Shown here: one piece after another, positions 340 through 30,498 of the stretch
Position numbering within the stretch: position 1 is the first letter of the stretch
How the letters are laid out: every line of letters starts with the position of its first letter
Virus record (IMG/VR): IMGVR_UViG_3300042305_001773
Location: 141,045-205,044 of that record
Length of the DNA stretch: 64,000 nucleotides
Reading direction: 5' to 3' (one strand)
Notes under the pieces: generated by a model
The model's database searches: none
What the model saw: the letters and a program-made list of their open reading frames with translations, nothing else
What the model was told of the DNA's origin: nothing
Translations under genes and position numbers: made by a program

Positions 340-669
340 TCACCGGCAGCAGCGGCAGCCGCGGCAGCTGCGGCAAGCGCGGACGGCGCGAACCGGAGCG
401 GCTACAACCTGCACCGGGACTTCTACCACGGCGCGGGTCACGGTGCGAGTCTTCTCGATCGTCCGCCCGAAAAGCCCCTCGCGGCACGAGCTGCGGCACG
501 AGCTTTCCGTGCAGCAGGTGCCGTTGGCGCAAGCCGTGGCGGGGGCAGCGGCGATTACGGCCGCGGCCTCCGGGGCCTGCTTCAGCACGCTCTGCGGCTC
601 ACCGGCATCGCCAGCGAGAACGACGGACGAAACGAACGCAAGAACAACCGCTGCAACACAAGACTTCAT
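340..669 (-). CDS. secreted Cys-rich small protein
   Basis: Signal-peptide-like N-terminus (MKSCVAAVVLAFVSSVVLA), 10 Cys in the mature part, AAGGAG SD. Confidence 0.75.
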   Translation of the reverse strand: MKSCVAAVVLAFVSSVVLAGDAGEPQSVLKQAPEAAAVIAAAPATACANGTCCTESSCRSSCREGLFGRTIEKTRTVTRAVVEVPVQVVAAPVRAVRACRSCRGCRCCR

Positions 670-719
670 GTCAATCTCCTTGAACTACCGAACAAATACT
701 CCGACACGCGTCGGTGTAA

Positions 720-766
720 CCTGCTCAGCTGTACTATCTGTATAGCTGAGCGGGATTTGATTGCAA
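720..766 (-). promoter_or_regulatory. sigma70-like promoter (TTGCAA-N16-TATACA) overlapped by an inverted repeat
   Basis: -35 at 766..761, -10 at 744..739; perfect 8-bp arms at 723-730 and 744-751 with a 13-nt spacer. Confidence 0.55.
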
Positions 767-815: not shown

Positions 816-1082
816 CTATTCGCGCACGACGTGCACGTTGTACCAACGCATTTGATTATTCAACCACCTAGCTTCGGCGTCGAGGGCTTCGGCGCGCGAG
901 GTAAACCCTGTGAACAACGGACCACCGACGGGAGCCATATCAGCTATCCATTCGCCGGGTCTGCGTGCATCTGGTTCGACGTGGCTCGCTCGTTTGATGT
1001 CCAACGCGCCGAGCGCTTTCAAATCAATCTCTTCGCCGTAAAGGCATTGAGCCGCGCCGTTAGGTCGCACAAAAATTTGCAT
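816..1082 (-). CDS. small conserved protein with RASHVEP motif, recalled as accompanying DUF1257/DUF2997/AAA clusters
   Basis: Motif KRASHVEPD...W.ADMAPVGGP...R.EAL.AE..WL, recalled from planctomycete gene clusters; not searched. Confidence 0.65.
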   Translation of the reverse strand: MQIFVRPNGAAQCLYGEEIDLKALGALDIKRASHVEPDARRPGEWIADMAPVGGPLFTGFTSRAEALDAEARWLNNQMRWYNVHVVRE

Positions 1083-1089
1083 GGGCGCC

Positions 1090-2091
1090 TCACATCGAGA
1101 TTAAACGGCGGGTTGGAATCAATTCGTTCATATTTACAGGCGGCCGCAGATTAGCCGCAGCGGTGGGCCTGTACAGGTTTTGCTGCCGCTGGTCGGAACG
1201 CGACACGTTAAACGCGTTAAACTGATCTATCCGATCAATAAACGTGTTTGCAAACAGCGCCTGATCGTGGGTGTCTACTCGCGTATAACGACCAACAGTC
1301 GAGTCGTGCTGCGGGCGGAAAATGATATGCCCGCCGGCAACGACCGAGTGGCCGCAAAACGCGATAAGCGCATTGATCTGGTCGGCGTTTGCGATGATTG
1401 CGTAATCAACAACTTTGAGTCGCGACATTTCAATCGTCGGGTCATCCTCGGCGCGCGAATAGATCGACACCTGCATCAGCTTGCTTCCAACTACCTGCGC
1501 TTTTCCGGCAACAGTTACAAAACCGCGCAATGACGAGCTGCTGACCTGTGCTTCGCCGCCGATGTACGACATGCCGTCTAGCGCTACTTGGATTGCTACT
1601 GCGCGGCCGGCAACGCCGCTGCTGCCGCGAATTGTACAGCTGATTACACGCGCGGCGTCACGCACAAACGCGTCATCGTACACGTTAGTAGAACCAGATA
1701 CGGTGCCGCCATATGCGCGAGAGTTGCCCCACAGCTGGCTGTCTTCACCAACGTGCGCACGACCGCTCACAATAGCGTTATTTCGTACGCGCACATTATC
1801 GCGAACGACCGCGTTGCCGCACACGTGAGATCGGTCCATCACGCTGACTCGGCCCTCTACGGTGGCGTTGTGGTACACCTGCGCCCATTTAGTGACTAGT
1901 ACAGAATCAGCCACTTTTGCTGTGTCGGCGACCCAGCCATTGCCGTTTACGTGGCGATGCGCAAACACGCGTCCACGCCCGTCTTTGAAATCGTGTTTAG
2001 ATGCTCGCTTTTTTCGGGGTTTTACTGCGGGCATCTCGACCGTCGGCGCTTCAAGTACGCCGACGGCCCCGTTTTTCTGTTCCTCCATCAC
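1090..2091 (-). CDS. left-handed beta-helix (hexapeptide repeat) protein
   Basis: AHRHVNGNGWVADTA leader followed by hexapeptide periodicity (VCGNAV VRDNVR VRNNAI VSGRAH VGEDSQ LWGNSR). Confidence 0.8.
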   Translation of the reverse strand: MMEEQKNGAVGVLEAPTVEMPAVKPRKKRASKHDFKDGRGRVFAHRHVNGNGWVADTAKVADSVLVTKWAQVYHNATVEGRVSVMDRSHVCGNAVVRDNVRVRNNAIVSGRAHVGEDSQLWGNSRAYGGTVSGSTNVYDDAFVRDAARVISCTIRGSSGVAGRAVAIQVALDGMSYIGGEAQVSSSSLRGFVTVAGKAQVVGSKLMQVSIYSRAEDDPTIEMSRLKVVDYAIIANADQINALIAFCGHSVVAGGHIIFRPQHDSTVGRYTRVDTHDQALFANTFIDRIDQFNAFNVSRSDQRQQNLYRPTAAANLRPPVNMNELIPTRRLISM

Positions 2092-3035
2092 GACTCCATG
2101 GGAAGTACACGACGCCGCGGGGCGTTCGTGATCAGGTTGTCCAGCGCGGTCTTGACTTCGCCCATCTGCTGGGTCAAGTTCTGCCGCAAGTTGGTGTTCT
2201 TGCGCAGATCTTTCACGTCGACACCCGAAACAATGTCAGTAGCGCGCTGAATTAAGTTATCCAGCTGCGCGTTTGAGCGAATATTCATTTGCCGGAAGTT
2301 GTCATAAAACTCTTTAAAGTTTTCGATTGCAGAGTTTTGAAACTTCTTTTTCGTGCCGTCCGGTTCGTCGGTTAGCCGCTCGATCAGGTGCGAGATCATG
2401 TCCTGTAGCTGCTCGGCAAACGCGTTTTCAGCCATGACTACCGCTGTCTCGAACCGATGCTGCACGCGCTGCTGTTCCTGCTGATACAGCTCAGGATTGA
2501 ACGTCATCAGATAGTTCGGCGGATCGACCGGCGGGTACTCCCACCGAAGATCAAACACGCCTTCTAGCGACGGCGGATAGTCGTTGGGGTTGTACAGATC
2601 GCCTAGCTTTTCGCGGGCGGCGACTTTGATCGCTTCGTATTCCAGCTGCAGGTTTGCGGCCGCCACCACAAGCTGCTCTTTGTATTCGCGCATCCGGGTT
2701 TCAAACGCGCCGATGTCAGCCTGCTTGATGAGGCGCACGCCTTCCTGCGGATATGGCAGCGTCATGGAGCGCCAGTACGCCGACGCCTGACTTTTGAGCG
2801 TTGTCAGTACACGATAAGTTGTATTCTTAGTATCAATCAGGCGCTTGGATGCCGTGACCAGATCCGTGGCTGCGTGAAACGTATCCGCGGCTTGCTTGGT
2901 CTGCGCGTCCGAAAGCTTGCGCTGCGTTCCTAGCCACGAGAACGACAGCTTGACCGCACCCATCGTCTGACGCAGCTCGCTTGCAGTCTGCTCGACTGTT
3001 GTGTTTTCTTCGGGCGTTGTGTCGGCTGTAGACAT
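2088..3035 (-). CDS. DUF3150-like alpha-helical protein
   Basis: SW.G..RKL ... SKRLID ... LPY..G..L ... Y.P.DYP ... F...W pattern; lies in the AAA ATPase cluster. Confidence 0.55.
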   Translation of the reverse strand: MSTADTTPEENTTVEQTASELRQTMGAVKLSFSWLGTQRKLSDAQTKQAADTFHAATDLVTASKRLIDTKNTTYRVLTTLKSQASAYWRSMTLPYPQEGVRLIKQADIGAFETRMREYKEQLVVAAANLQLEYEAIKVAAREKLGDLYNPNDYPPSLEGVFDLRWEYPPVDPPNYLMTFNPELYQQEQQRVQHRFETAVVMAENAFAEQLQDMISHLIERLTDEPDGTKKKFQNSAIENFKEFYDNFRQMNIRSNAQLDNLIQRATDIVSGVDVKDLRKNTNLRQNLTQQMGEVKTALDNLITNAPRRRVLPMES

Positions 3036-3635
3036 TCAGTCTCCTTCTTCGTCTGTGTCAAGTTCTTCTTCAATTGTTTGCTCCACCCATTCGTCTATCG
3101 CAAACGCCTTGACGAGATCGCGCGGTAATTTCGCTAGATCTTCAAAGTCGCTTGGGATGTTGAAATCTGTAAGCTTTCCGTCGCGGTACACACCACAGAA
3201 CCCTACGCCCGGCTCGAAGCAGTAGGCTGTGATATCAAAACCCTCAACGGTCCGCAGGTGGTCAAAGAATTGAATTGGGGGCGACCACGCGGAATCAAAC
3301 GTTAGCGTCAGCTGCGTAGCTTTTGCCGGAAGTCGGCGGGGCGACTGATCTGTCTCGCGCCCTACGTCCCACTTTGTCCCCCAATGACCGACCTGCCAGT
3401 CGTACCAGTTTCTCGCTCCGTACAACTCGATGTTTTGCCGTTCTTGCGCCTCTAAAGCCAGTTGTGCGTCAGACCCGGTAGGGCCAGCACAACCGGCGAT
3501 AGTCGCTTTTAATTCGGCTGGGCACGGCAGAAATGTACCCATCAGACAACCACTGTTCCATGCGCGCACCAACTTGTGCAACTGCTCCGGGTCGTTGTGT
3601 TTAAACGTAACTCTGTTGGCGCACCAGTTAGGCAT
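3036..3635 (-). CDS. Api92/YubB-type ferredoxin-like domain protein
   Basis: MPNWCANR, NWYDW...WGTKWDV, FDSAWSPP and EPG.GFCG motifs; start moved to the ATG at 3635. Confidence 0.8.
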   Translation of the reverse strand: MPNWCANRVTFKHNDPEQLHKLVRAWNSGCLMGTFLPCPAELKATIAGCAGPTGSDAQLALEAQERQNIELYGARNWYDWQVGHWGTKWDVGRETDQSPRRLPAKATQLTLTFDSAWSPPIQFFDHLRTVEGFDITAYCFEPGVGFCGVYRDGKLTDFNIPSDFEDLAKLPRDLVKAFAIDEWVEQTIEEELDTDEEGD

Positions 3636-3653
3636 AATGTTTGCCGGCAATCC

Positions 3654-3685
3654 GCAGCTGCGGGGCAGTTACGCCCCGCAGCCGC
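3654..3685 (-). terminator. 13-bp stem-loop between the AAA ATPase and YubB-like genes
   Basis: GCGGCTGCGGGGC-GTAACT-GCCCCGCAGCTGC with one G-U pair on the minus strand; no U-tract, so it may be a processing or stability hairpin. Confidence 0.4.
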
Positions 3686-3699
3686 AGTATTGCTAGCAC

Positions 3700-5184
3700 T
3701 TAGCCTTTCGCCGGCGCCGCGACACGGCGCGGGCGCTGCGTTGTAACCGCCGGCTTACCAACACGCGTGTAAATACCGCGGTTGTCAGCCGACAGGCAGC
3801 GACCTTCAGCCCAGCCGCGCAGACGCTCAATCTGCTCGGCCGACGTCACCGAAATCGGTACCACGTTCTGTGCCGCTTCAACAAGCGGGATATCGAGCAG
3901 CGCCGCGAGCCTGCAGCACGACTTGATCTCGGCGCCGGTCCAGTTGGCGTCATCCGGCTTTTCCTGCGACTCGTCTACGCCGAAGTGCTTCAGGTAGATA
4001 TCCCAGATCGCCGCGCGCTGATCGGCGCCGGGCAGATCCACAAAGAAGATACCGTCGAAGCGCTCGGCGCGGGCAAACGGCGCCGGCAGCTGGCTGGCGT
4101 CGTTGCAGGTGCCGATGAAGAACACATCGGACGTGTGGTCGTTGAGCCACGTCAGCAGCGTGCCGAAAAGACGCGCCGAGACGCCCGAGTCTGTCTGGCC
4201 GGAGCTTCCGACGCCGGCAAGACCCTTCTCGATCTCGTCGACGAACAGAACGCACGGGGCCATGGCGTCGACCTGCTTGAGTGCACGCCGCATATTACCC
4301 TCGGACTCGCCCACGAACTTACCCATGAGCGAACCGAAATCCAGCATTACGGTCGGACGGCCGACCTCGTTGCCAAGTGCTTTGGCAAACTGCGACTTGC
4401 CGCAGCCCGGAGGCGACAGCAGTAGCACGCCCTTGGGGCGCTTTTCTACGTTGGTCTCACCCTGTCGTCGCATAGCGCGCAGGCAGAAACTCTTAAGGTT
4501 TTCGAGACCGCCAAGGTTCTCGAAGTTCGCGTCGCCACGATACAGCGTCATCGTTCCGCTCTTTTCGAGCGTCTGTGCCTTGATGCCCCAGATCGTATCC
4601 GGCGACAGCTTGTTATTGCGCACCAGCGACAGCGCGAACGCGTTCTCGGCCTCCTGCCGCGTCAGGCCGCGTGAGGCGTCGACGACAGCAGCTACGTCCT
4701 GCTCGGCCGGCTTGGCGAACGGAGAGCCGTCCGGGAACAGCTCGTTGCAGACCGTGGTCAGCTGCGGGAGATCCGGCAGCTCGTGATGCACTACCGTGAA
4801 CAGCTTCTCAACCTCGGGCTGCAGCTGCAGCACCGGCGCCACGATAATGATATGTTTGCCCTCGCCCTTGCCCTGCACCACACGATTGGCCAGAGCCTGC
4901 AGCACCTCGGGGTTACCAAGGAAGCGATGAAAATTCTTCAGGACGAGCAGCATCGGCTGCTTGGGCTGCGGCTGGTCGAGAAACCGCAACGCCTGAAGCG
5001 GGCCGGGAGCCGGGGCGGCACCCGAATACAGCTGGCGGTCGATGTCCCACACATCAAAACCCCAGTCCTTTTCTTCAGTTACGCGGCGAATCGACGCAAT
5101 TGCGTCATCGCACTCCTGTGATTCAACCCAGATGCCGGAGAAGCCGGCGCAAACCAGCTCCTTGATTTCTTTTTCGAGCGACAC
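3700..5184 (-). CDS. Ycf46-like AAA+ ATPase (degenerate N-terminal AAA-like domain plus active AAA domain)
   Basis: GGLENLK, Walker A SPPGCGKS, Walker B VLFVDEIEK, R.ERFD.IFFVDLP, WTGAEIK. Confidence 0.9.
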   Translation of the reverse strand: MSLEKEIKELVCAGFSGIWVESQECDDAIASIRRVTEEKDWGFDVWDIDRQLYSGAAPAPGPLQALRFLDQPQPKQPMLLVLKNFHRFLGNPEVLQALANRVVQGKGEGKHIIIVAPVLQLQPEVEKLFTVVHHELPDLPQLTTVCNELFPDGSPFAKPAEQDVAAVVDASRGLTRQEAENAFALSLVRNNKLSPDTIWGIKAQTLEKSGTMTLYRGDANFENLGGLENLKSFCLRAMRRQGETNVEKRPKGVLLLSPPGCGKSQFAKALGNEVGRPTVMLDFGSLMGKFVGESEGNMRRALKQVDAMAPCVLFVDEIEKGLAGVGSSGQTDSGVSARLFGTLLTWLNDHTSDVFFIGTCNDASQLPAPFARAERFDGIFFVDLPGADQRAAIWDIYLKHFGVDESQEKPDDANWTGAEIKSCCRLAALLDIPLVEAAQNVVPISVTSAEQIERLRGWAEGRCLSADNRGIYTRVGKPAVTTQRPRRVAAPAKG

Positions 5185-5223
5185 GTGTGACCTTTGGTTT
5201 GGTTTGGAAAAGACCCGCTATTG

Positions 5224-5415
5224 TCAGTTGCTTTCAGCGATCTGCTCGTCGTTGCTGGCGGCGTAGAACTCGCCCGTCAGCTGCTCGTCCACTTTTGCGC
5301 CCAGCGCTTGCTCAAGCGCGCGGGTTGCGTCCTGACAAGAGCTACCGGTAAAGCCGCTCGTTTCGATCTTGGTGCCGCCCTTGGGGTCGACAATGATTTC
5401 GATGGTCTTCGACAT
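5224..5415 (-). CDS. DUF2997 family protein
   Basis: IEIIVDPKGGTKIETSGFTGSSCQDATRALEQALG matches the DUF2997 pattern; 63 aa, next to DUF1257. Confidence 0.8.
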   Translation of the reverse strand: MSKTIEIIVDPKGGTKIETSGFTGSSCQDATRALEQALGAKVDEQLTGEFYAASNDEQIAESN

Positions 5416-5417
5416 GC

Positions 5418-5783
5418 TTAGAAACCTCCCGTCAGGCTGAGTTTGACCGAACCGTCCGGCAGCATTTCCTCGAACACCGAGTAGCCGCCCTTCTGCGCCT
5501 CATAGATCGCCTTTTCCACCGCGTACGCCTGCAGGAAATGATCCAGCTCTTCCTGCTTGCCCCACGCGCCGTTGTAGTTGTCGTACGCCGCGGCACCCGT
5601 CTCCGTGTTAAACACGGCCGGATACTGCCAGCCGGGAAGCTTTACAGCGAGGCCGTCCGCCGACTGCCCGGCAAACAGCACATGGTGCCCGGCTTTCGGG
5701 GCCTCAAGCCCGAGACGCTTGCAGGCCGCTTCAATCGCGGCGGCGTCCTTTACTTCCGTCTTGATCTGAACAATGTGAGACAT
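5418..5783 (-). CDS. DUF1257 (Ycf35-like) protein
   Basis: MSH...IKTEVKD...I.AAC..LG start, YA.E......GY and EE...DGSVKL end. Confidence 0.8.
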   Translation of the reverse strand: MSHIVQIKTEVKDAAAIEAACKRLGLEAPKAGHHVLFAGQSADGLAVKLPGWQYPAVFNTETGAAAYDNYNGAWGKQEELDHFLQAYAVEKAIYEAQKGGYSVFEEMLPDGSVKLSLTGGF

Positions 5784-5807: not shown

Positions 5808-6107
5808 TTAAGGTAGTTCTTGAAGTGCACACACAATTGTGTTTTCAAATTGTTCCGGCGAGATGTAATCATTGCCGGCAAAATATTCCAATACAGCAAC
5901 CGCGGTTTTGCGGTCATAAACCTGTTTAAATTCGCGAGGGCCGCGCGGCGTATCCAGACGATACTCAGTTATGTCGTGAAGTGTCACAACTTCTGGTATC
6001 GCCAGCACGTCTTTGTATTTCGTGCGTATCGCGTCTAACTCATCAAGCGCGGTCAGGATTCGCTCGCGATCGTTAGCATAAGAACTATCGTTCGCGTACG
6101 GTGTCAT
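5808..6107 (-). CDS. hypothetical protein
   Basis: ATG at 6107 overlaps the upstream stop (ATGA). Confidence 0.6.
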   Translation of the reverse strand: MTPYANDSSYANDRERILTALDELDAIRTKYKDVLAIPEVVTLHDITEYRLDTPRGPREFKQVYDRKTAVAVLEYFAGNDYISPEQFENTIVCALQELP

Positions 6108-6412
6108 CTGTAGGCTACGACCTCGGCGCGGGTTTCCACCCAAACGTGCGCGCCACAAGAAAGCGGCGAGTCGGGAGAATAGACAACCCGCGACTCGCCG
6201 CGCACGTCAACGGTTTTGGCCGCGTATGTTTTATTACGCCACTTAATAGTCAGCGGCGGTACGCGCAGGTTTTGATTTTTGTTGCTGCGAATAATGTGCT
6301 GGTTGACGTGTATGCGTTTAATTGTCCCAGCCGGCATTGTCATTTCATCAGCGTCCCCCGGGAAACGCAGCGGAATACGGGGCTCTAGCAGGCAGACGTC
6401 TTCTGTCGCCAT
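6104..6412 (-). CDS. conserved hypothetical phage protein
   Basis: IHVNQH.IR.N ... VYSPD.PLSCGA.VW.ET motif, common in large phages. Confidence 0.7.
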   Translation of the reverse strand: MATEDVCLLEPRIPLRFPGDADEMTMPAGTIKRIHVNQHIIRSNKNQNLRVPPLTIKWRNKTYAAKTVDVRGESRVVYSPDSPLSCGAHVWVETRAEVVAYR

Positions 6413-6484
6413 TGTGACGTTATTTATTCCGCGTCGGCTTGGTCGTCCGTGACCGTCGCCGAACGCGGTTTAAATAGACAGGCG

Positions 6485-7366
6485 TCAGGTCGCCATCATC
6501 GAGCGGAGCTGCTTGTGCGCCGAAAGAATCTCGGCGGCCGTCGTGTAACAGCCGTCGCACGTCTCCAGAAACGCAGACGCGGCGTTCAGCTGCTCCATCG
6601 GCAGCGTCGTCGTGCCGCTCGGCGCTTTCGCGACCGGGCGCTTCGGCGCAGCCTTGGCGGGTTCTGCCGCCTTGGTTGCGTGCTTGCGTCGCGCGGCGTC
6701 ACGGCTGCGCTCCTCGCCGGCGGCCACAGCCACCGCACCGCGCTTCGCCGGGGCAACGCCCGCCTTCTTCAACAGCTGGCTCACCTGAGCCGGGCTGACC
6801 GTTACACGCTTCTTGGCGAGCGCGGCCACGATGTCAACACCGCGGAGCGAATCGCCAGACTCCTGCCGACGCTCGATCTCCTCGCGGATGTGATCGGCGC
6901 CGCTCTTCTTCTCGGCCATGTCCTTCACCTTCCCTTTTGGGGTCTTGGTCGCCTTGGGCGCCTCGACCGGGTCATCGTCTTCGTCGGTCTCCACAGTGGA
7001 GTCGACAGCTTCGTCAGAAACCTCGTCGCCTTCTTCTGGCGCGTACTCGGTCTCGTCGTCGTCTTCGTCGATCTCTTCGTCGGGCAGCTTGGCAGCCGTC
7101 TCACGAACGTCTGTGCTGCCTTCGTCTTCGTAGTCGGCGTCTGCTTCCGCGTACGCCGCTTCGTCATCGACCGTGTCTTCTTCAAGCTCGGCGTCAACAT
7201 CTGCGTCAACGTCTTCGTCGTCGTAATCTTCTGGTGTCGCGAACCGCATCCGTGTGGTTCCTTTCTCCTTCTTCTTTTCTTTCTCTGCAGGCGCCTTGCT
7301 GGTTGCGCCCGGTAGTGGCTTCCCCCACAAATTTGCCGGACTCACAAACTCTTCAGCTTTGGCCAT
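6485..7366 (-). CDS. acidic N-terminal region fused to a planctomycete-type small DNA-binding (nucleoid-like) protein
   Basis: D/E-rich region at about aa 45-135; C-terminal KKS.ADHIRE...GVDIVAALAKK.VTVSPAQVS and a Lys/Ala/Pro-rich linker; GGAGAGGA SD. Confidence 0.65.
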   Translation of the reverse strand: MAKAEEFVSPANLWGKPLPGATSKAPAEKEKKKEKGTTRMRFATPEDYDDEDVDADVDAELEEDTVDDEAAYAEADADYEDEGSTDVRETAAKLPDEEIDEDDDETEYAPEEGDEVSDEAVDSTVETDEDDDPVEAPKATKTPKGKVKDMAEKKSGADHIREEIERRQESGDSLRGVDIVAALAKKRVTVSPAQVSQLLKKAGVAPAKRGAVAVAAGEERSRDAARRKHATKAAEPAKAAPKRPVAKAPSGTTTLPMEQLNAASAFLETCDGCYTTAAEILSAHKQLRSMMAT

Positions 7367-9337: not shown

Positions 9338-9506
9338 CAGCTATCACTTGCGAGTCGTTTCTTTGGCGGCGGCCGCTGCAACCTGACACATGTAACCGAG
9401 TACATTTGCCAGTCCAGCAAGACCGTATATGAAAACATGCCCAGTGTATTTGAGGCTGTCTTCAACCCATTGAAATTCAGACTCGCTACCGTTGTTATTG
9501 TGGTTC

Positions 9507-11423
9507 ATGGATAAACCTGATCAAACAGTTACTGAAGCAGTTGACATGCCTTCCGTAGGCGTGCAATCACTTCTACAAGAATTAATCTCGATCGACGTGA
9601 CGGATGTGCATTCTGTTCACGCGCGTGCCGCTGTTTTGCAGCAGCTCGCGGGTCGGCATGCTTTCCCGTCGCTCGAACCTATTTTGCCTTTGGTTCTGAA
9701 CCTTAATGGACGCCCGTACAGCATTCAGAATCATATGCCTTTTTCCCCACTTTTCCGGCTACTGACGCCGAAAAATCAAGTGTGGTGCACGGGGCGTCAG
9801 GTATCAAAATCGACCAGCCTAGCAGCGCACGGAGTTGTAGTTGCCAACTCTATCCCGTTCTTCAAAACGTTATTCATCACACCGTTGTACGAACAGATAC
9901 GCCGGTTCTCGAATAACTATGTGCGTCCGTTTATCGATCAGTCTCCTGTGAAGTCGCAATGGAGCGGCACGACGACCGAGAATTCAGTTCTGCAAAGATC
10001 TTTTAAAAACAACTCAATGATGTTGTTTAGCTTTGCGCTTTTAGATTCGGATCGTGTGCGTGGTGTTTCTGCAGACCGCGTGTGCATCGACGAAGTTCAG
10101 GACATGGATCCTGATCACGTGCCGATCATTCAAGAAACGATGTCTTACTCCAAATGGGCGACGAGTTATTACACAGGAACGCCGAAGACGCTAGATAACT
10201 TAATTTACGGATTGTATAAACGATCATCACAGGCCGAATGGTTTATACCTTGTCATTCATGCAAGCACTGGAGCATCCCTTCGCTTGAGTATGACTTAGA
10301 TAAAATGATCGGCCCATACAGCATTCATATCAGCGAGAACTATCCGGGCACCGTCTGCGCTAAATGTCAGAAACCGATCAGCCCAAGGCATGGTCGGTGG
10401 GTGCATAGATATCCCGAACGCCGCTGGCAATTTGCCGGGTATCACGTACCGCAGATGATACTACCGCTTCATTTCTCCGACCCTGAAAAGTGGTCAACTC
10501 TATTGTTGAAGAGGGAAGGCTTTGGGAATATGACCCAAGCGCAGTTCTACAACGAGGTAATGGGAGAAAGCGTTGATACCGGTCAGAAGCTCATCAGCGA
10601 AACTGATTTGAAGGCTGCGTGCGTGCTAGACTGGGAAAACAAGAAAGAACCAGACCCTAAGTGCTTTGCAAATCTCTCGAACTACAAACATCGCATCCTT
10701 GCGGTCGACTGGGGCGGTGGCGGAGAAGCAGGTATTAGTTTCACCGTGCTTACTGTGCTGGGGTTCCGCCCAGATGGGACCATCGACACGCTGTGGGCCA
10801 AGCGCCTGCTTATTGGCGGCGATCATTTGGCCGAAGCGGTTGAATGTATGCGCTGGTCTAACTTGTTTAATTGCGATTTTGTCGCTCACGATTACACGGG
10901 CGCCGGCACGGTCCGCGAAACGGTCATGGTGCAGGCTGGGTTTAATCTAGAGCGAGTCTTGGCGATGCGACTTGTTCGTTCCGCGTCGCAAGATTTGATG
11001 GTGTTCAAACCGCCGACAGAGATCAATCATCGAGCGCACTATAGCCTCGACAAAACGCGGTCGTTGCTGTACACGTGTCAGGCGATCAAGCTGAAGCAAG
11101 TCCGCTTCTTCCAGTATGACTGGGCGTCGCAGGACTCGCCGGGCTTGGTGTCGGACTTTCTTGCGCTGGTAGAAAGTAAAGCCGAGTCTAGACTAGGCGG
11201 CGATATTTATACCATTACAAGGAACACGTTGTTGACTGACGACTTTGCGCAAGCTGTTAACCTAGGCTGCGCCGCTCTTTGGCACGTGAATAACGCGTGG
11301 CCTAATTTCGCGGAGATAGCTGGCGTAGCCCGGTTAAGCGAGCGTGTTGTTAAGGCAGAGACGCCGATGGATGACGACTGGGCGGATGATTCCATCGGGC
11401 GAAACTACTTTGGCGGGTATTAA
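9507..11423 (+). CDS. terL: terminase large subunit, GpA-like
   Basis: Walker A GRQVSKST, Walker B RVCIDEVQD, coupling motif TGTP, CxxC...CxxC Zn lid, RuvC-like AVDWGGG; start uncertain (9492, 9507 or 9546). Confidence 0.9.
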   Translation: MDKPDQTVTEAVDMPSVGVQSLLQELISIDVTDVHSVHARAAVLQQLAGRHAFPSLEPILPLVLNLNGRPYSIQNHMPFSPLFRLLTPKNQVWCTGRQVSKSTSLAAHGVVVANSIPFFKTLFITPLYEQIRRFSNNYVRPFIDQSPVKSQWSGTTTENSVLQRSFKNNSMMLFSFALLDSDRVRGVSADRVCIDEVQDMDPDHVPIIQETMSYSKWATSYYTGTPKTLDNLIYGLYKRSSQAEWFIPCHSCKHWSIPSLEYDLDKMIGPYSIHISENYPGTVCAKCQKPISPRHGRWVHRYPERRWQFAGYHVPQMILPLHFSDPEKWSTLLLKREGFGNMTQAQFYNEVMGESVDTGQKLISETDLKAACVLDWENKKEPDPKCFANLSNYKHRILAVDWGGGGEAGISFTVLTVLGFRPDGTIDTLWAKRLLIGGDHLAEAVECMRWSNLFNCDFVAHDYTGAGTVRETVMVQAGFNLERVLAMRLVRSASQDLMVFKPPTEINHRAHYSLDKTRSLLYTCQAIKLKQVRFFQYDWASQDSPGLVSDFLALVESKAESRLGGDIYTITRNTLLTDDFAQAVNLGCAALWHVNNAWPNFAEIAGVARLSERVVKAETPMDDDWADDSIGRNYFGGY

Positions 11424-24741: not shown

Positions 24742-30498
<5,757 letters not shown>

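What the first reader, a model, noticed from the sequence alone, without database searches (positions are those of the whole stretch)
816..5783. Uncharacterised AAA-ATPase module: DUF1257, DUF2997, Ycf46-like AAA, DUF3150-like, RASHVEP protein
Seen: a co-oriented, tightly packed run of DUF1257-like, DUF2997-like, AAA ATPase (intact Walker A/B, degenerate N-terminal AAA-like half), a long helical DUF3150-like protein and a small RASHVEP protein. A YubB-like gene and a beta-helix gene sit inside the run. Known: Ycf46 and Ycf35/DUF1257 homologs occur in cyanobacteria and algal plastids with unresolved function. Inference: a conserved multi-protein remodelling machine (unfoldase plus adaptors or substrates) carried by a phage, possibly for host takeover, counter-defence or assembly of a polymer.
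Basis: partly seen in the sequence, partly recalled or inferred. Interest (0 to 1): 0.7.

Follow-up and report, generated by a model that had tools for sequence, protein, structure and literature searches.

The report
Conserved Ycf46-type AAA+ module in phages
A freshwater jumbo phage carries a five-gene cassette, built around a Ycf46-type AAA+ ATPase, that recurs in rearranged gene order in many unrelated phages, plasmids and Planctomycetota genomes, so the five proteins almost certainly work together, though on what target is still unknown.

Summary
Window 816-5783 carries seven tightly packed minus-strand genes, and most family calls are right.

- **AAA protein:** it is a full-length Ycf46-family ATPase. 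It has a degenerate N-terminal AAA half and an intact C-terminal motor.
- **63-aa protein:** it is DUF2997.
- **121-aa and 315-aa proteins:** they are divergent DUF1257 and DUF3150 members. This is shown through their homologues and, for DUF3150, by predicted structure.
- **88-aa "RASHVEP" protein:** it belongs to a large family with no Pfam model.

I compared 23 AAA lineages from phages, plasmids and bacterial genomes. DUF1257-like genes accompany the ATPase in 18 lineages, DUF2997-like in 17, DUF3150-like in 15 and the 88-aa family in 8. Partner genes are always on the ATPase's strand. More than six gene orders occur.

The YubB-like and beta-helix genes occur only in this phage's own lineage. 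They are inserts, not core parts.

DUF3150 also pairs with MoxR-type ATPases elsewhere, so it looks like a general AAA+ partner.

The best reading is a substrate-threading unfoldase with two dedicated small-protein pairs. The target and biological role are inferred, not shown. The complex prediction gave no answer. The module is not described in the searchable literature. It links the long-unexplained ycf46 and ycf35 genes.

The parts
5418..5783 (-). DUF1257 (Ycf35)-like small protein, 121 aa. Core part. Its N-terminus (Met-Ser-His) is nearly invariant.
   Evidence: Pfam DUF1257 scores 17.8 bits, below the cutoff. Fourteen of 22 homologues hit PF06868, best E 4.4e-15. Atlas score is 0.96 to DUF1257 clusters. 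A DUF1257-like gene accompanies the AAA in 18 of 23 lineages.
5224..5415 (-). DUF2997 small protein, 63 aa. Core part. Cys27 is invariant. It almost always lies directly after the DUF1257-like gene.
   Evidence: PF11211 scores 59.7 bits against a cutoff of 24.1. The median gap to the DUF1257-like gene is 10 nt in 124 pairs. It is present in 17 of 23 lineages.
3700..5184 (-). Ycf46-family AAA+ ATPase, 494 aa. Residues 1 to ~215 form a degenerate AAA-like half with no P-loop. Residues ~245-430 form an active classical AAA domain with a pore loop. A conserved C-terminal extension follows.
   Evidence: PF00004 E 1.7e-27. The AF2 model has pLDDT 85.7. The best Swiss-Prot structural matches are plastid ycf46 over the full length, TM 0.82-0.86, E ~1e-37; PEX6, AFG2 and p97 D1-D2 come next. 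Conserved motifs are shown.
3036..3650 (-). DUF1281_C-like ('YubB-like') protein, 204 aa. It is a lineage-specific insert and not part of the core module.
   Evidence: DUF1281_C scores 22.1 bits against a cutoff of 22.8; phrog_20518 E 2.7e-18. It is absent between AAA and DUF3150 in relatives such as L014 and L022. In L024, L026, L029 and L042 it sits 7-9 kb away. It occurs in 1 of 23 lineages.
2088..3035 (-). DUF3150-superfamily protein, 315 aa. Core part. It has an N-terminal alpha/beta unit, a long helical hairpin and a C-terminal helical bundle. A disordered C-terminal tail carries invariant Arg308.
   Evidence: There is no direct Pfam hit, but 9 of 20 homologues hit PF11348. The AF2 model has pLDDT 89.3. 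It matches AFDB DUF3150 clusters at E 8e-19, TM 0.79. No solved-structure analogue was found. It is present in 15 of 23 lineages.
1090..2091 (-). Hexapeptide-repeat (left-handed beta-helix type) protein, 333 aa. It is an insert between the DUF3150-like and RASHVEP genes, found only in the jumbo-phage lineage.
   Evidence: Hexapep scores 26.8 bits against a cutoff of 27; phrog_7964 and phrog_5070 E ~1e-19. It is present in 38 loci, all from one AAA lineage. In Planctomycetota and plasmid copies the flanking genes are directly adjacent.
816..1082 (-). 88-aa 'RASHVEP' protein. It belongs to a family with no Pfam model and usually follows the DUF3150-like gene.
   Evidence: No Pfam, PHROG or NCBIfam hit. 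Thirteen columns are invariant, including R31, S33, V35 and P37. The family has 2,858 50%-identity clusters at E<=1e-3. It is present in 8 of 23 lineages. It lies directly after DUF3150 in Ca. Manganitrophus plasmids, at 41% identity.
701..754 (.). Two hairpins 60-115 nt downstream of the last gene: a 15-bp stem at 720-754 and a 5-bp stem at 701-714. They may mark the end of the transcription unit.
   Evidence: Consensus scan and sequence. The long stem has no clear U-run, so a terminator function is not shown.

Best explanation
The core is a five-gene functional module centred on a Ycf46-type AAA+ protein unfoldase or remodeller.

**Shown:**
- The ATPase has an inactive N-terminal AAA-like half. 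It also has one catalytically complete classical AAA domain with an aromatic pore loop. This is the layout of the D1-D2 segregases (p97/Cdc48, PEX6, AFG2), except that here the N-terminal half has lost its P-loop.
- Four partner families travel with the ATPase as two fixed gene pairs: DUF1257 with DUF2997, and DUF3150 with the RASHVEP protein.

**Inferred:**
- The ATPase forms a hexamer. Its active ring threads a protein substrate, and its degenerate ring serves as a docking platform.
- The DUF1257/DUF2997 pair acts as an adaptor or regulator. Its conserved N-terminal His (or Cys) and the invariant Cys (or His) of DUF2997 may bind a metal or sense redox state.
- DUF3150, with its RASHVEP partner, is the scaffold that recruits the client, or is itself the client. 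Its invariant Arg-bearing disordered C-terminal tail is the likely handle for the ATPase.

The module is mostly carried by mobile elements, often beside replication and recombination genes. The client is therefore most likely a host or element protein complex that must be taken apart or matured early in the element's life cycle. The YubB-like and beta-helix genes are lineage-specific additions.
For: **ATPase identity and motifs**
- The ATPase matches Ycf46 over its full length, and D1-D2 segregases come next.
- The Walker A, pore loop, Walker B, sensor-1 and Arg fingers are conserved across 31 sequences down to 28% identity.

**Co-occurrence**
- Among 23 AAA lineages (60% identity clusters), DUF1257-like accompanies the ATPase in 18, DUF2997-like in 17, DUF3150-like in 15 and RASHVEP in 8.
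- All partner genes within 10 kb of the ATPase lie on its strand: 132 of 132, 127 of 127, 114 of 114 and 87 of 87. More than six gene orders occur.
- The module is found in independent replicon types:
  - a ~200-kb freshwater phage lineage;
  - Rhizobium phage L338C and Tunturiibacter phage Tunturi_3;
  - three Ca. Manganitrophus plasmids with all five genes in a row;
  - many Planctomycetota chromosomes.
- Divergent loci keep recognisable DUF1257-like and DUF2997-like variants (hhalign 92.5% and 68.6%).

**DUF3150 as an AAA+ partner**
- DUF3150 also sits next to MoxR/AAA_5 ATPases together with a VWA-metallopeptidase protein, in a Cupriavidus plasmid and in cyanophage MinM2.

**Cellular relatives**
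- ycf35 and ycf46 are lost together in freshwater red-algal plastids (PMC5940233).
Against: - No physical interaction is shown. The only complex prediction returned 'no answer'.
- No substrate, phenotype or expression data exist for any phage copy. No RNA run was listed.
- DUF3150 has no solved-structure analogue that would hint at a role.
- Some AAA lineages lack detectable partners: mycobacteriophage cluster O, Streptococcus satellite Javan368 and a short Desulfamplus contig.
- RASHVEP is found in only 8 of 23 lineages.
- In S. elongatus the ycf46 operon holds a CopG-like gene rather than ycf35 or DUF2997 (PMC13683863), so the linkage is not universal.
Confidence: 0.5

Rival explanations
1. 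The module is an anti-phage defence system, or a counter-defence or superinfection-exclusion system, carried by mobile elements. The AAA+ would act as a sensor or effector, as in IetAS/SgiAT-type systems.
For: The module sits on phages, plasmids and multi-copy chromosomal islands. One planctomycete copy lies near a type I R-M S subunit. One copy lies next to an E1-JAB-RING-E2 cluster of the kind known from defence islands. The AAA domain scores against IetA models.
Against: PADLOC matches only the generic AAA domain and none of the four partners. No protease, nuclease or other obvious effector lies in the core. The module is a syntenic, conserved block across a whole phage lineage (66-100% AAA identity) rather than a variable hotspot cargo. 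Its relatives Ycf46 and Ycf35 are housekeeping or stress genes of cyanobacteria and plastids.
Confidence: 0.2
2. The module is a metal- or cofactor-insertion chaperone, functionally parallel to MoxR-VWA systems. It would mature a metalloprotein needed by the element or the host.
For: DUF3150 occurs in MoxR/AAA_5 + VWA-metallopeptidase cassettes. DUF2997 has an invariant Cys. Its distant variants carry His at that position and end in His-rich tails. DUF1257 keeps His or Cys at position 3. DUF2997-ycf35 cluster with ferredoxin fed7 in cyanobacteria (PMC4284462). ycf35 and ycf46 are co-lost with the haem oxygenase gene pbsA in plastids (PMC5940233).
Against: The ATPase here is a classical-clade threading motor with a pore loop, not a MoxR-type one. 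No metalloenzyme client is conserved nearby. All metal-binding arguments rest on single residues and low-complexity tails.
Confidence: 0.15
3. The module is a replication, recombination or particle-assembly helper. The ATPase would remodel DNA-bound or structural complexes of the element itself.
For: Neighbours in several loci are helicases, a clamp-loader-like protein, a PD-(D/E)XK nuclease, toprim, ParB and terminase.
Against: No partner has a recognisable DNA-binding or structural fold. The neighbourhood differs between replicons. Plastid and cyanobacterial relatives have no such context.
Confidence: 0.1
4. The genes are merely neighbours inherited together and have no shared function.
For: Within the close phage lineage, synteny alone would explain the arrangement.
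Against: The same families recur with AAA homologues of 28-48% identity, on different replicon types and in at least six gene orders, with 100% strand concordance.
Confidence: 0.03

Closest known systems
Ycf46 (AAA) and Ycf35 (DUF1257) of cyanobacteria and red-lineage plastids, with DUF2997
   Same: The ATPase matches plastid Ycf46 over its whole length (TM 0.82-0.86, 26-28% identity). The small partners belong to the same Pfam families as Ycf35 and the cyanobacterial DUF2997 proteins.
   Different: Here all are fused into one co-directional cassette together with DUF3150 and the RASHVEP protein. The cassette rides on phages, plasmids and Planctomycetota islands. In model cyanobacteria ycf46 sits in a stress operon with other genes, and DUF2997-ycf35 cluster with fed7 (PMC13683863, PMC7496141, PMC4284462). 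DUF3150 did not pass the family cut-off in the Synechococcus control genome.
Type II AAA+ segregases with two stacked AAA rings (p97/Cdc48, AFG2, Rix7, PEX1/PEX6)
   Same: Two stacked AAA-fold halves, a classical-clade motor with an aromatic pore loop, and structural alignment across both halves. The expected mechanism is the same: substrate threading aided by cofactors.
   Different: There is no N-terminal double-psi-barrel cofactor domain. The N-terminal half lacks any P-loop. The protein is half the size. The partners are unrelated to UBX, Npl4 or PEX cofactors. This is a resemblance in how it works, not membership.
MoxR/AAA_5 - DUF3150 - VWA/metallopeptidase (DUF2201) cassettes of plasmids and cyanophages
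   Same: They share the DUF3150 partner next to an AAA+ ATPase on mobile elements.
   Different: The ATPase clade differs (MoxR versus classical Ycf46 type). A VWA-metallopeptidase protein takes the place of DUF1257, DUF2997 and RASHVEP.
IetAS / SgiAT-type AAA+ plus protease pairs (defence or toxin-antitoxin)
   Same: The AAA domain scores against IetA models (53-57 bits). Both are carried on mobile elements.
   Different: No subtilisin-like partner is present. The match covers only the generic AAA domain. The NCBIfam IteA cutoff of 510 bits is far from reached.

Membership tests
Ycf46 family AAA+ ATPase | About 500 aa, with an N-terminal non-catalytic domain plus a single classical AAA domain, alignable to plastid or cyanobacterial Ycf46 over the full length | tested here: met
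   The AF2 model aligns at residues 1-466/474 to five Swiss-Prot ycf46 entries, TM 0.82-0.86, E 1e-35 to 1e-38. The next hits (PEX6) are at about 1e-24.
Ycf46 family AAA+ ATPase | Catalytically complete AAA domain: Walker A, Walker B, sensor-1, Arg fingers and pore loop 1 | tested here: met
   G260, G262, K263, D316, E317, N361, R372, R375 and the pore-loop residues G292 and E295 are invariant or nearly so in 31 sequences. PF00004 E 1.7e-27.
Ycf46 family AAA+ ATPase | Phylogenetic placement inside the Ycf46 clade rather than a sister clade | not tested
   No tree with cyanobacterial Ycf46 sequences was built, because none were available as tool-derived sequences.
DUF1257 (PF06868, Ycf35) | Score above the Pfam gathering cut-off | tested here: not met
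   The window protein scores 17.8 bits against 22.2.
DUF1257 (PF06868, Ycf35) | Homology to bona fide members shown through intermediates | tested here: met
   Fourteen of 22 aligned homologues hit PF06868, best E 4.4e-15. The iterated HMM links the window protein to the L338C and Tunturi_3 proteins, which pass the cut-off. Atlas score is 0.96.
DUF2997 (PF11211) | Score above the Pfam gathering cut-off over the whole model | tested here: met
   59.7 bits against 24.1, covering model positions 1-47 of 47.
DUF3150 (PF11348) | Score above the Pfam gathering cut-off | tested here: not met
   No hit for the window protein at E<=0.1 or in the whole phage genome at E<=1.
DUF3150 (PF11348) | Same fold and transitive homology to named members | tested here: met
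   Nine of 20 homologues hit PF11348, best E 1.1e-20. The model matches AFDB 'DUF3150' clusters at E 8e-19, TM 0.79. My family HMM hits the annotated DUF3150 proteins of Cupriavidus (1e-41) and phage MinM2 (3e-34).
DUF1281 / Api92-like C-terminal domain ('YubB-like') | Score above the Pfam gathering cut-off | tested here: not met
   22.1 bits against 22.8, covering 61 residues only. The few plasmid homologues are all annotated as hypothetical.
IetAS / IteA anti-phage system | IetA-type ATPase above the family cut-off together with an IetS protease partner | tested here: not met
   NCBIfam IteA scores 53.5 bits against a cutoff of 510. PADLOC hits only the AAA domain and no partner.
MoxR-VWA-DUF3150 cassette | MoxR/AAA_5 ATPase and a VWA-domain partner next to DUF3150 | tested here: not met
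   The window ATPase is PF00004 classical type with no AAA_5 hit, and no VWA gene is in the run. The cassette itself was seen.

The most novel reading that the evidence does not exclude
Ycf46-type ATPase, Ycf35/DUF1257, DUF2997, DUF3150 and the RASHVEP protein form one previously unrecognised prokaryotic segregase machine with its own cofactor set. Phages and plasmids use it to dismantle or mature specific host complexes. The orphan plastid and cyanobacterial genes ycf46 and ycf35 are the two surviving halves of the same machine.
Probability: 0.25. Interest if true: 0.8.

Novelty: new variant of a known kind. Interest (0 to 1): 0.55.

Why it matters
ycf46 and ycf35 have been conserved 'hypothetical' genes of cyanobacteria and algal plastids for decades. 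DUF2997 and DUF3150 are equally blank.

Finding them welded into one cassette across phages, plasmids and Planctomycetota gives a concrete, testable hypothesis: they are parts of one AAA+ machine. It also adds two unexpected partners, DUF3150 and a family with no Pfam model that has about 2,900 sequence clusters.

Cultivable carriers exist in which the module can be deleted, namely Tunturiibacter phage Tunturi_3 and Rhizobium phage L338C.

DUF3150 pairs with two different AAA+ clades. This suggests a general mobile-element strategy built on ATP-driven protein remodelling.

Tried and rejected
- **DNA-level search:** searching the phage collection with the region found nothing.
- **PADLOC and NCBIfam:** they gave only generic AAA hits.
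- **Four-chain complex prediction:** the job with AAA, DUF1257-like, DUF2997 and DUF3150-like returned 'no answer' (score 0.01). It is not used as evidence either way.
- **Fold searches of the DUF3150 model:** Foldseek and VIA-align wide searches against solved structures gave only generic helical-bundle matches.
- **Profile search of the DUF3150 family:** searching PDB sequences found only designed helical bundles.
- **De novo clustering of all locus ORFs:** overlapping-frame ORFs polluted the clusters. The analysis yielded only the two variant small-protein families.
- **Apparent DUF3150-RASHVEP fusion protein (P0184):** I considered it as Rosetta-stone evidence and then discounted it. Its contig carries a multiply frameshifted AAA gene, so the fusion may be an assembly error or decay.
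- **Link to ubiquitin-like conjugation genes:** E1, JAB and E2 genes lie beside three DUF3150 loci, but the window's phage has no ThiF or Prok-JAB match.
- **Cyanobacterial ycf46 operon:** I had recalled that it contains DUF1257 and DUF2997. The literature read here describes one of the flanking genes, 0416, as a CopG-like gene (PMC13683863).
- **RNA runs:** none was listed for the region, so co-transcription could not be examined.

Full report
**Context**

The window is the last 64 kb of a 205,044-bp IMG/VR virus record rated complete. It carries a gpA-type terminase large subunit at 9492-11423. Near-identical DNA occurs in lake and freshwater metagenomes from at least 16 studies. The closest cellular homologues of its proteins are in Planctomycetota MAGs. 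The element is therefore a freshwater jumbo phage, probably of Planctomycetota.

**The observation**

Seven intact minus-strand ORFs fill 816-5783. Spacers between successive genes are 2, 39, 49, 0, -4 and 7 nt. Hairpins follow the last gene. Direct family scans gave the following results.

| Gene (aa) | Direct scan result |
|---|---|
| 63 | DUF2997, clearly above cut-off |
| 494 | PF00004 AAA, clear hit |
| 121 | DUF1257, just under threshold |
| 204 | DUF1281_C, just under threshold |
| 333 | Hexapep, just under threshold |
| 315 | no hit |
| 88 | no hit |

**The ATPase**

- An AF2 model built on 31 diverse homologues has pLDDT 85.7.
- It aligns over both halves to D1-D2 ATPases such as p97, Cdc48 and Rix7.
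- In Swiss-Prot its five best matches are plastid Ycf46 proteins over the full length (TM 0.82-0.86, 26-28% identity, E about 1e-37). PEX6 and AFG2 come well behind.
- The first ~215 residues have the strand-helix pattern and lid of an AAA module but no P-loop.
- The second half keeps Walker A, the KFVGESE pore loop, Walker B, sensor-1 and both Arg fingers. All are conserved down to 28% identity.

**The partners**

- *315-aa protein.* It gave a confident model (pLDDT 89.3). The model has an alpha/beta unit, a long helical hairpin, a helical bundle and a disordered tail. The only invariant residue, Arg308, lies in that tail. Nine of 20 homologues hit Pfam DUF3150. The model matches AFDB and Atlas clusters named DUF3150. 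My family HMM hits annotated DUF3150 proteins. No solved structure resembles it beyond generic bundles.
- *121-aa protein.* It is tied to DUF1257 through homologues (14 of 22) and Atlas features. Its N-terminal Met-Ser-His is almost invariant.
- *DUF2997.* It has one invariant Cys.
- *88-aa protein.* It has 13 invariant positions, including the RASHVEP core. It has no Pfam model. The family comprises 2,858 50%-identity clusters at E<=1e-3.

**Co-occurrence**

I fetched the following loci, then built iterated HMMs for each window protein:

- 70 viral loci;
- 80 genome loci;
- contigs encoding bacterial and phage homologues;
- GenBank phage and plasmid loci.

Grouping the ATPases at 60% identity gave 23 lineages.

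| Family | Lineages with it, of 23 |
|---|---|
| DUF1257-like | 18 |
| DUF2997-like | 17 |
| DUF3150-like | 15 |
| RASHVEP | 8 |
| YubB-like | 1 |
| beta-helix | 1 |

- Every partner gene within 10 kb lies on the ATPase's strand: 132 of 132, 127 of 127, 114 of 114 and 87 of 87. More than six gene orders occur.
- DUF1257-like and DUF2997 are almost always adjacent, with a median gap of 10 nt.
- DUF3150-like and RASHVEP are adjacent except in the jumbo-phage lineage, where the beta-helix gene is inserted between them.
- Three Ca. Manganitrophus (Nitrospirota) plasmids carry AAA, DUF1257, DUF2997, DUF3150 and RASHVEP back to back.
- Tunturiibacter phage Tunturi_3 has all five. Rhizobium phage L338C has the three-gene version.
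- Planctomycetota genomes often hold several copies. In one Tepidisphaeraceae chromosome the flanking genes encode helicases, a clamp-loader-like protein and a PD-(D/E)XK nuclease.
- In the most distant loci the small proteins are present as variants. The DUF1257-like variant starts MPC. The DUF2997-like variant has His in place of the Cys, often with a His-rich tail.

**A second architecture for DUF3150**

In Cupriavidus plasmid pRK1-1 and in cyanophage MinM2, DUF3150 lies beside a MoxR/AAA_5-type ATPase. The same cassette also holds a protein with a putative metallopeptidase domain plus a VWA-like domain. DUF3150 therefore partners with two different AAA+ clades. This argues that it is an ATPase cofactor or client rather than a bystander.

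**Cellular relatives**

- The Synechocystis slr0373-0374-0376 operon (ycf46) is a strongly stress-induced operon of unknown function (PMC7496141).
- The S. elongatus ycf46 operon has the same character and depends on (p)ppGpp (10.1101/2025.07.21.665879, PMC13683863).
- In S. elongatus a neighbouring gene of ycf46 (0416) is CopG-like, not ycf35 (PMC13683863).
- DUF2997 and ycf35 cluster with ferredoxin fed7 (PMC4284462).
- ycf35 and ycf46 are lost together in freshwater red-algal plastids (PMC5940233).
- No paper in the searchable library describes the cassette found here.

**Mechanism**

Two things are shown: a complete threading-type motor and a conserved set of co-directional partners. The following points are inferred.

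- The ATPase forms a hexamer with a degenerate docking ring.
- DUF1257/DUF2997 act as an adaptor or regulator, possibly metal- or redox-sensitive.
- DUF3150/RASHVEP act as a recruiting scaffold or as the client, engaged through the Arg-bearing tail.

The one complex prediction returned no answer. Rival readings (defence or counter-defence, metal-cofactor chaperone, replication or assembly helper) cannot be excluded and are scored separately.

**Verdict**

The module is real and conserved. Two of the seven genes are inserts. The biological role is open.
- It is a new variant of a known kind: an AAA+ unfoldase with a novel cofactor set.
- It is of moderate to good interest because it links four orphan families and offers cultivable systems for testing.

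Noticed in passing
L051:8939-9721 (also L052, L054, L055, L056, L065): In several related phages the AAA gene is split at the Walker B codons by a ~780-nt group I intron (Rfam RF00028, 68.6 bits). The insert has many in-frame stops, so it is not an intein. The window's copy is uninterrupted.
   Followed up: yes
L075:2795-4261, L077:2096-3583 (also L078, L082): These distant AAA homologues carry the Walker B-like segment (FIDEIEKGLAG...) upstream of the Walker A (GTGKS). This suggests a permuted or rearranged ATPase core.
   Followed up: partly
L070-L084 (e.g. L072:11401-11610, L075:4840-5052): DUF2997-like variants replace the invariant Cys with His, and many end in His-rich tails (HAHVHSHNVAHHHH type). 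The matching DUF1257-like variants start MPC instead of MSH. These are possible metal ligands.
   Followed up: partly
L168:7935-12872; L166:1-2177; L165:5816-6241: Ubiquitin-like conjugation genes lie beside three independent DUF3150 loci. L168 has ThiF/E1, JAB, FHA, RING and E2. The Cupriavidus plasmid has a PRTRC cassette with ThiF. The Manganitrophus plasmid has a JAB gene. The window's own phage has no ThiF or Prok-JAB match.
   Followed up: partly
window 3036-3650; L024, L026, L029, L042, L053: The DUF1281_C-like gene sits inside the module only in the closest relatives. In others it lies 7-9 kb downstream, and in some it is absent from the locus, so it moves within this phage lineage.
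   Followed up: partly
window 24742-29346: A 1,534-aa ORF with seven stretches of collagen triple-helix repeats (Pfam E 9e-51) lies in the window's most GC-rich segment (0.66). It is probably a fibre or decoration protein.
   Followed up: no
window 5808-7366: Three tightly packed upstream genes (116, 102 and 293 aa) are syntenic with the module throughout the phage lineage. The 293-aa protein is very acidic. A homologue of it appears on the opposite strand in some Planctomycetota loci.
   Followed up: partly
window 340-669: A small Cys-rich ORF with a signal-peptide-like N-terminus (MKSCVAAVVLAFVSSVVLAG...) follows the module after the hairpins. It has a good ribosome-binding site.
   Followed up: no
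L168:5821-6939 (protein P0184): The DUF3150-like and RASHVEP domains lie in one reading frame. The same contig has a multiply frameshifted AAA gene, so the fusion may be an assembly artefact or a decaying copy.
   Followed up: yes
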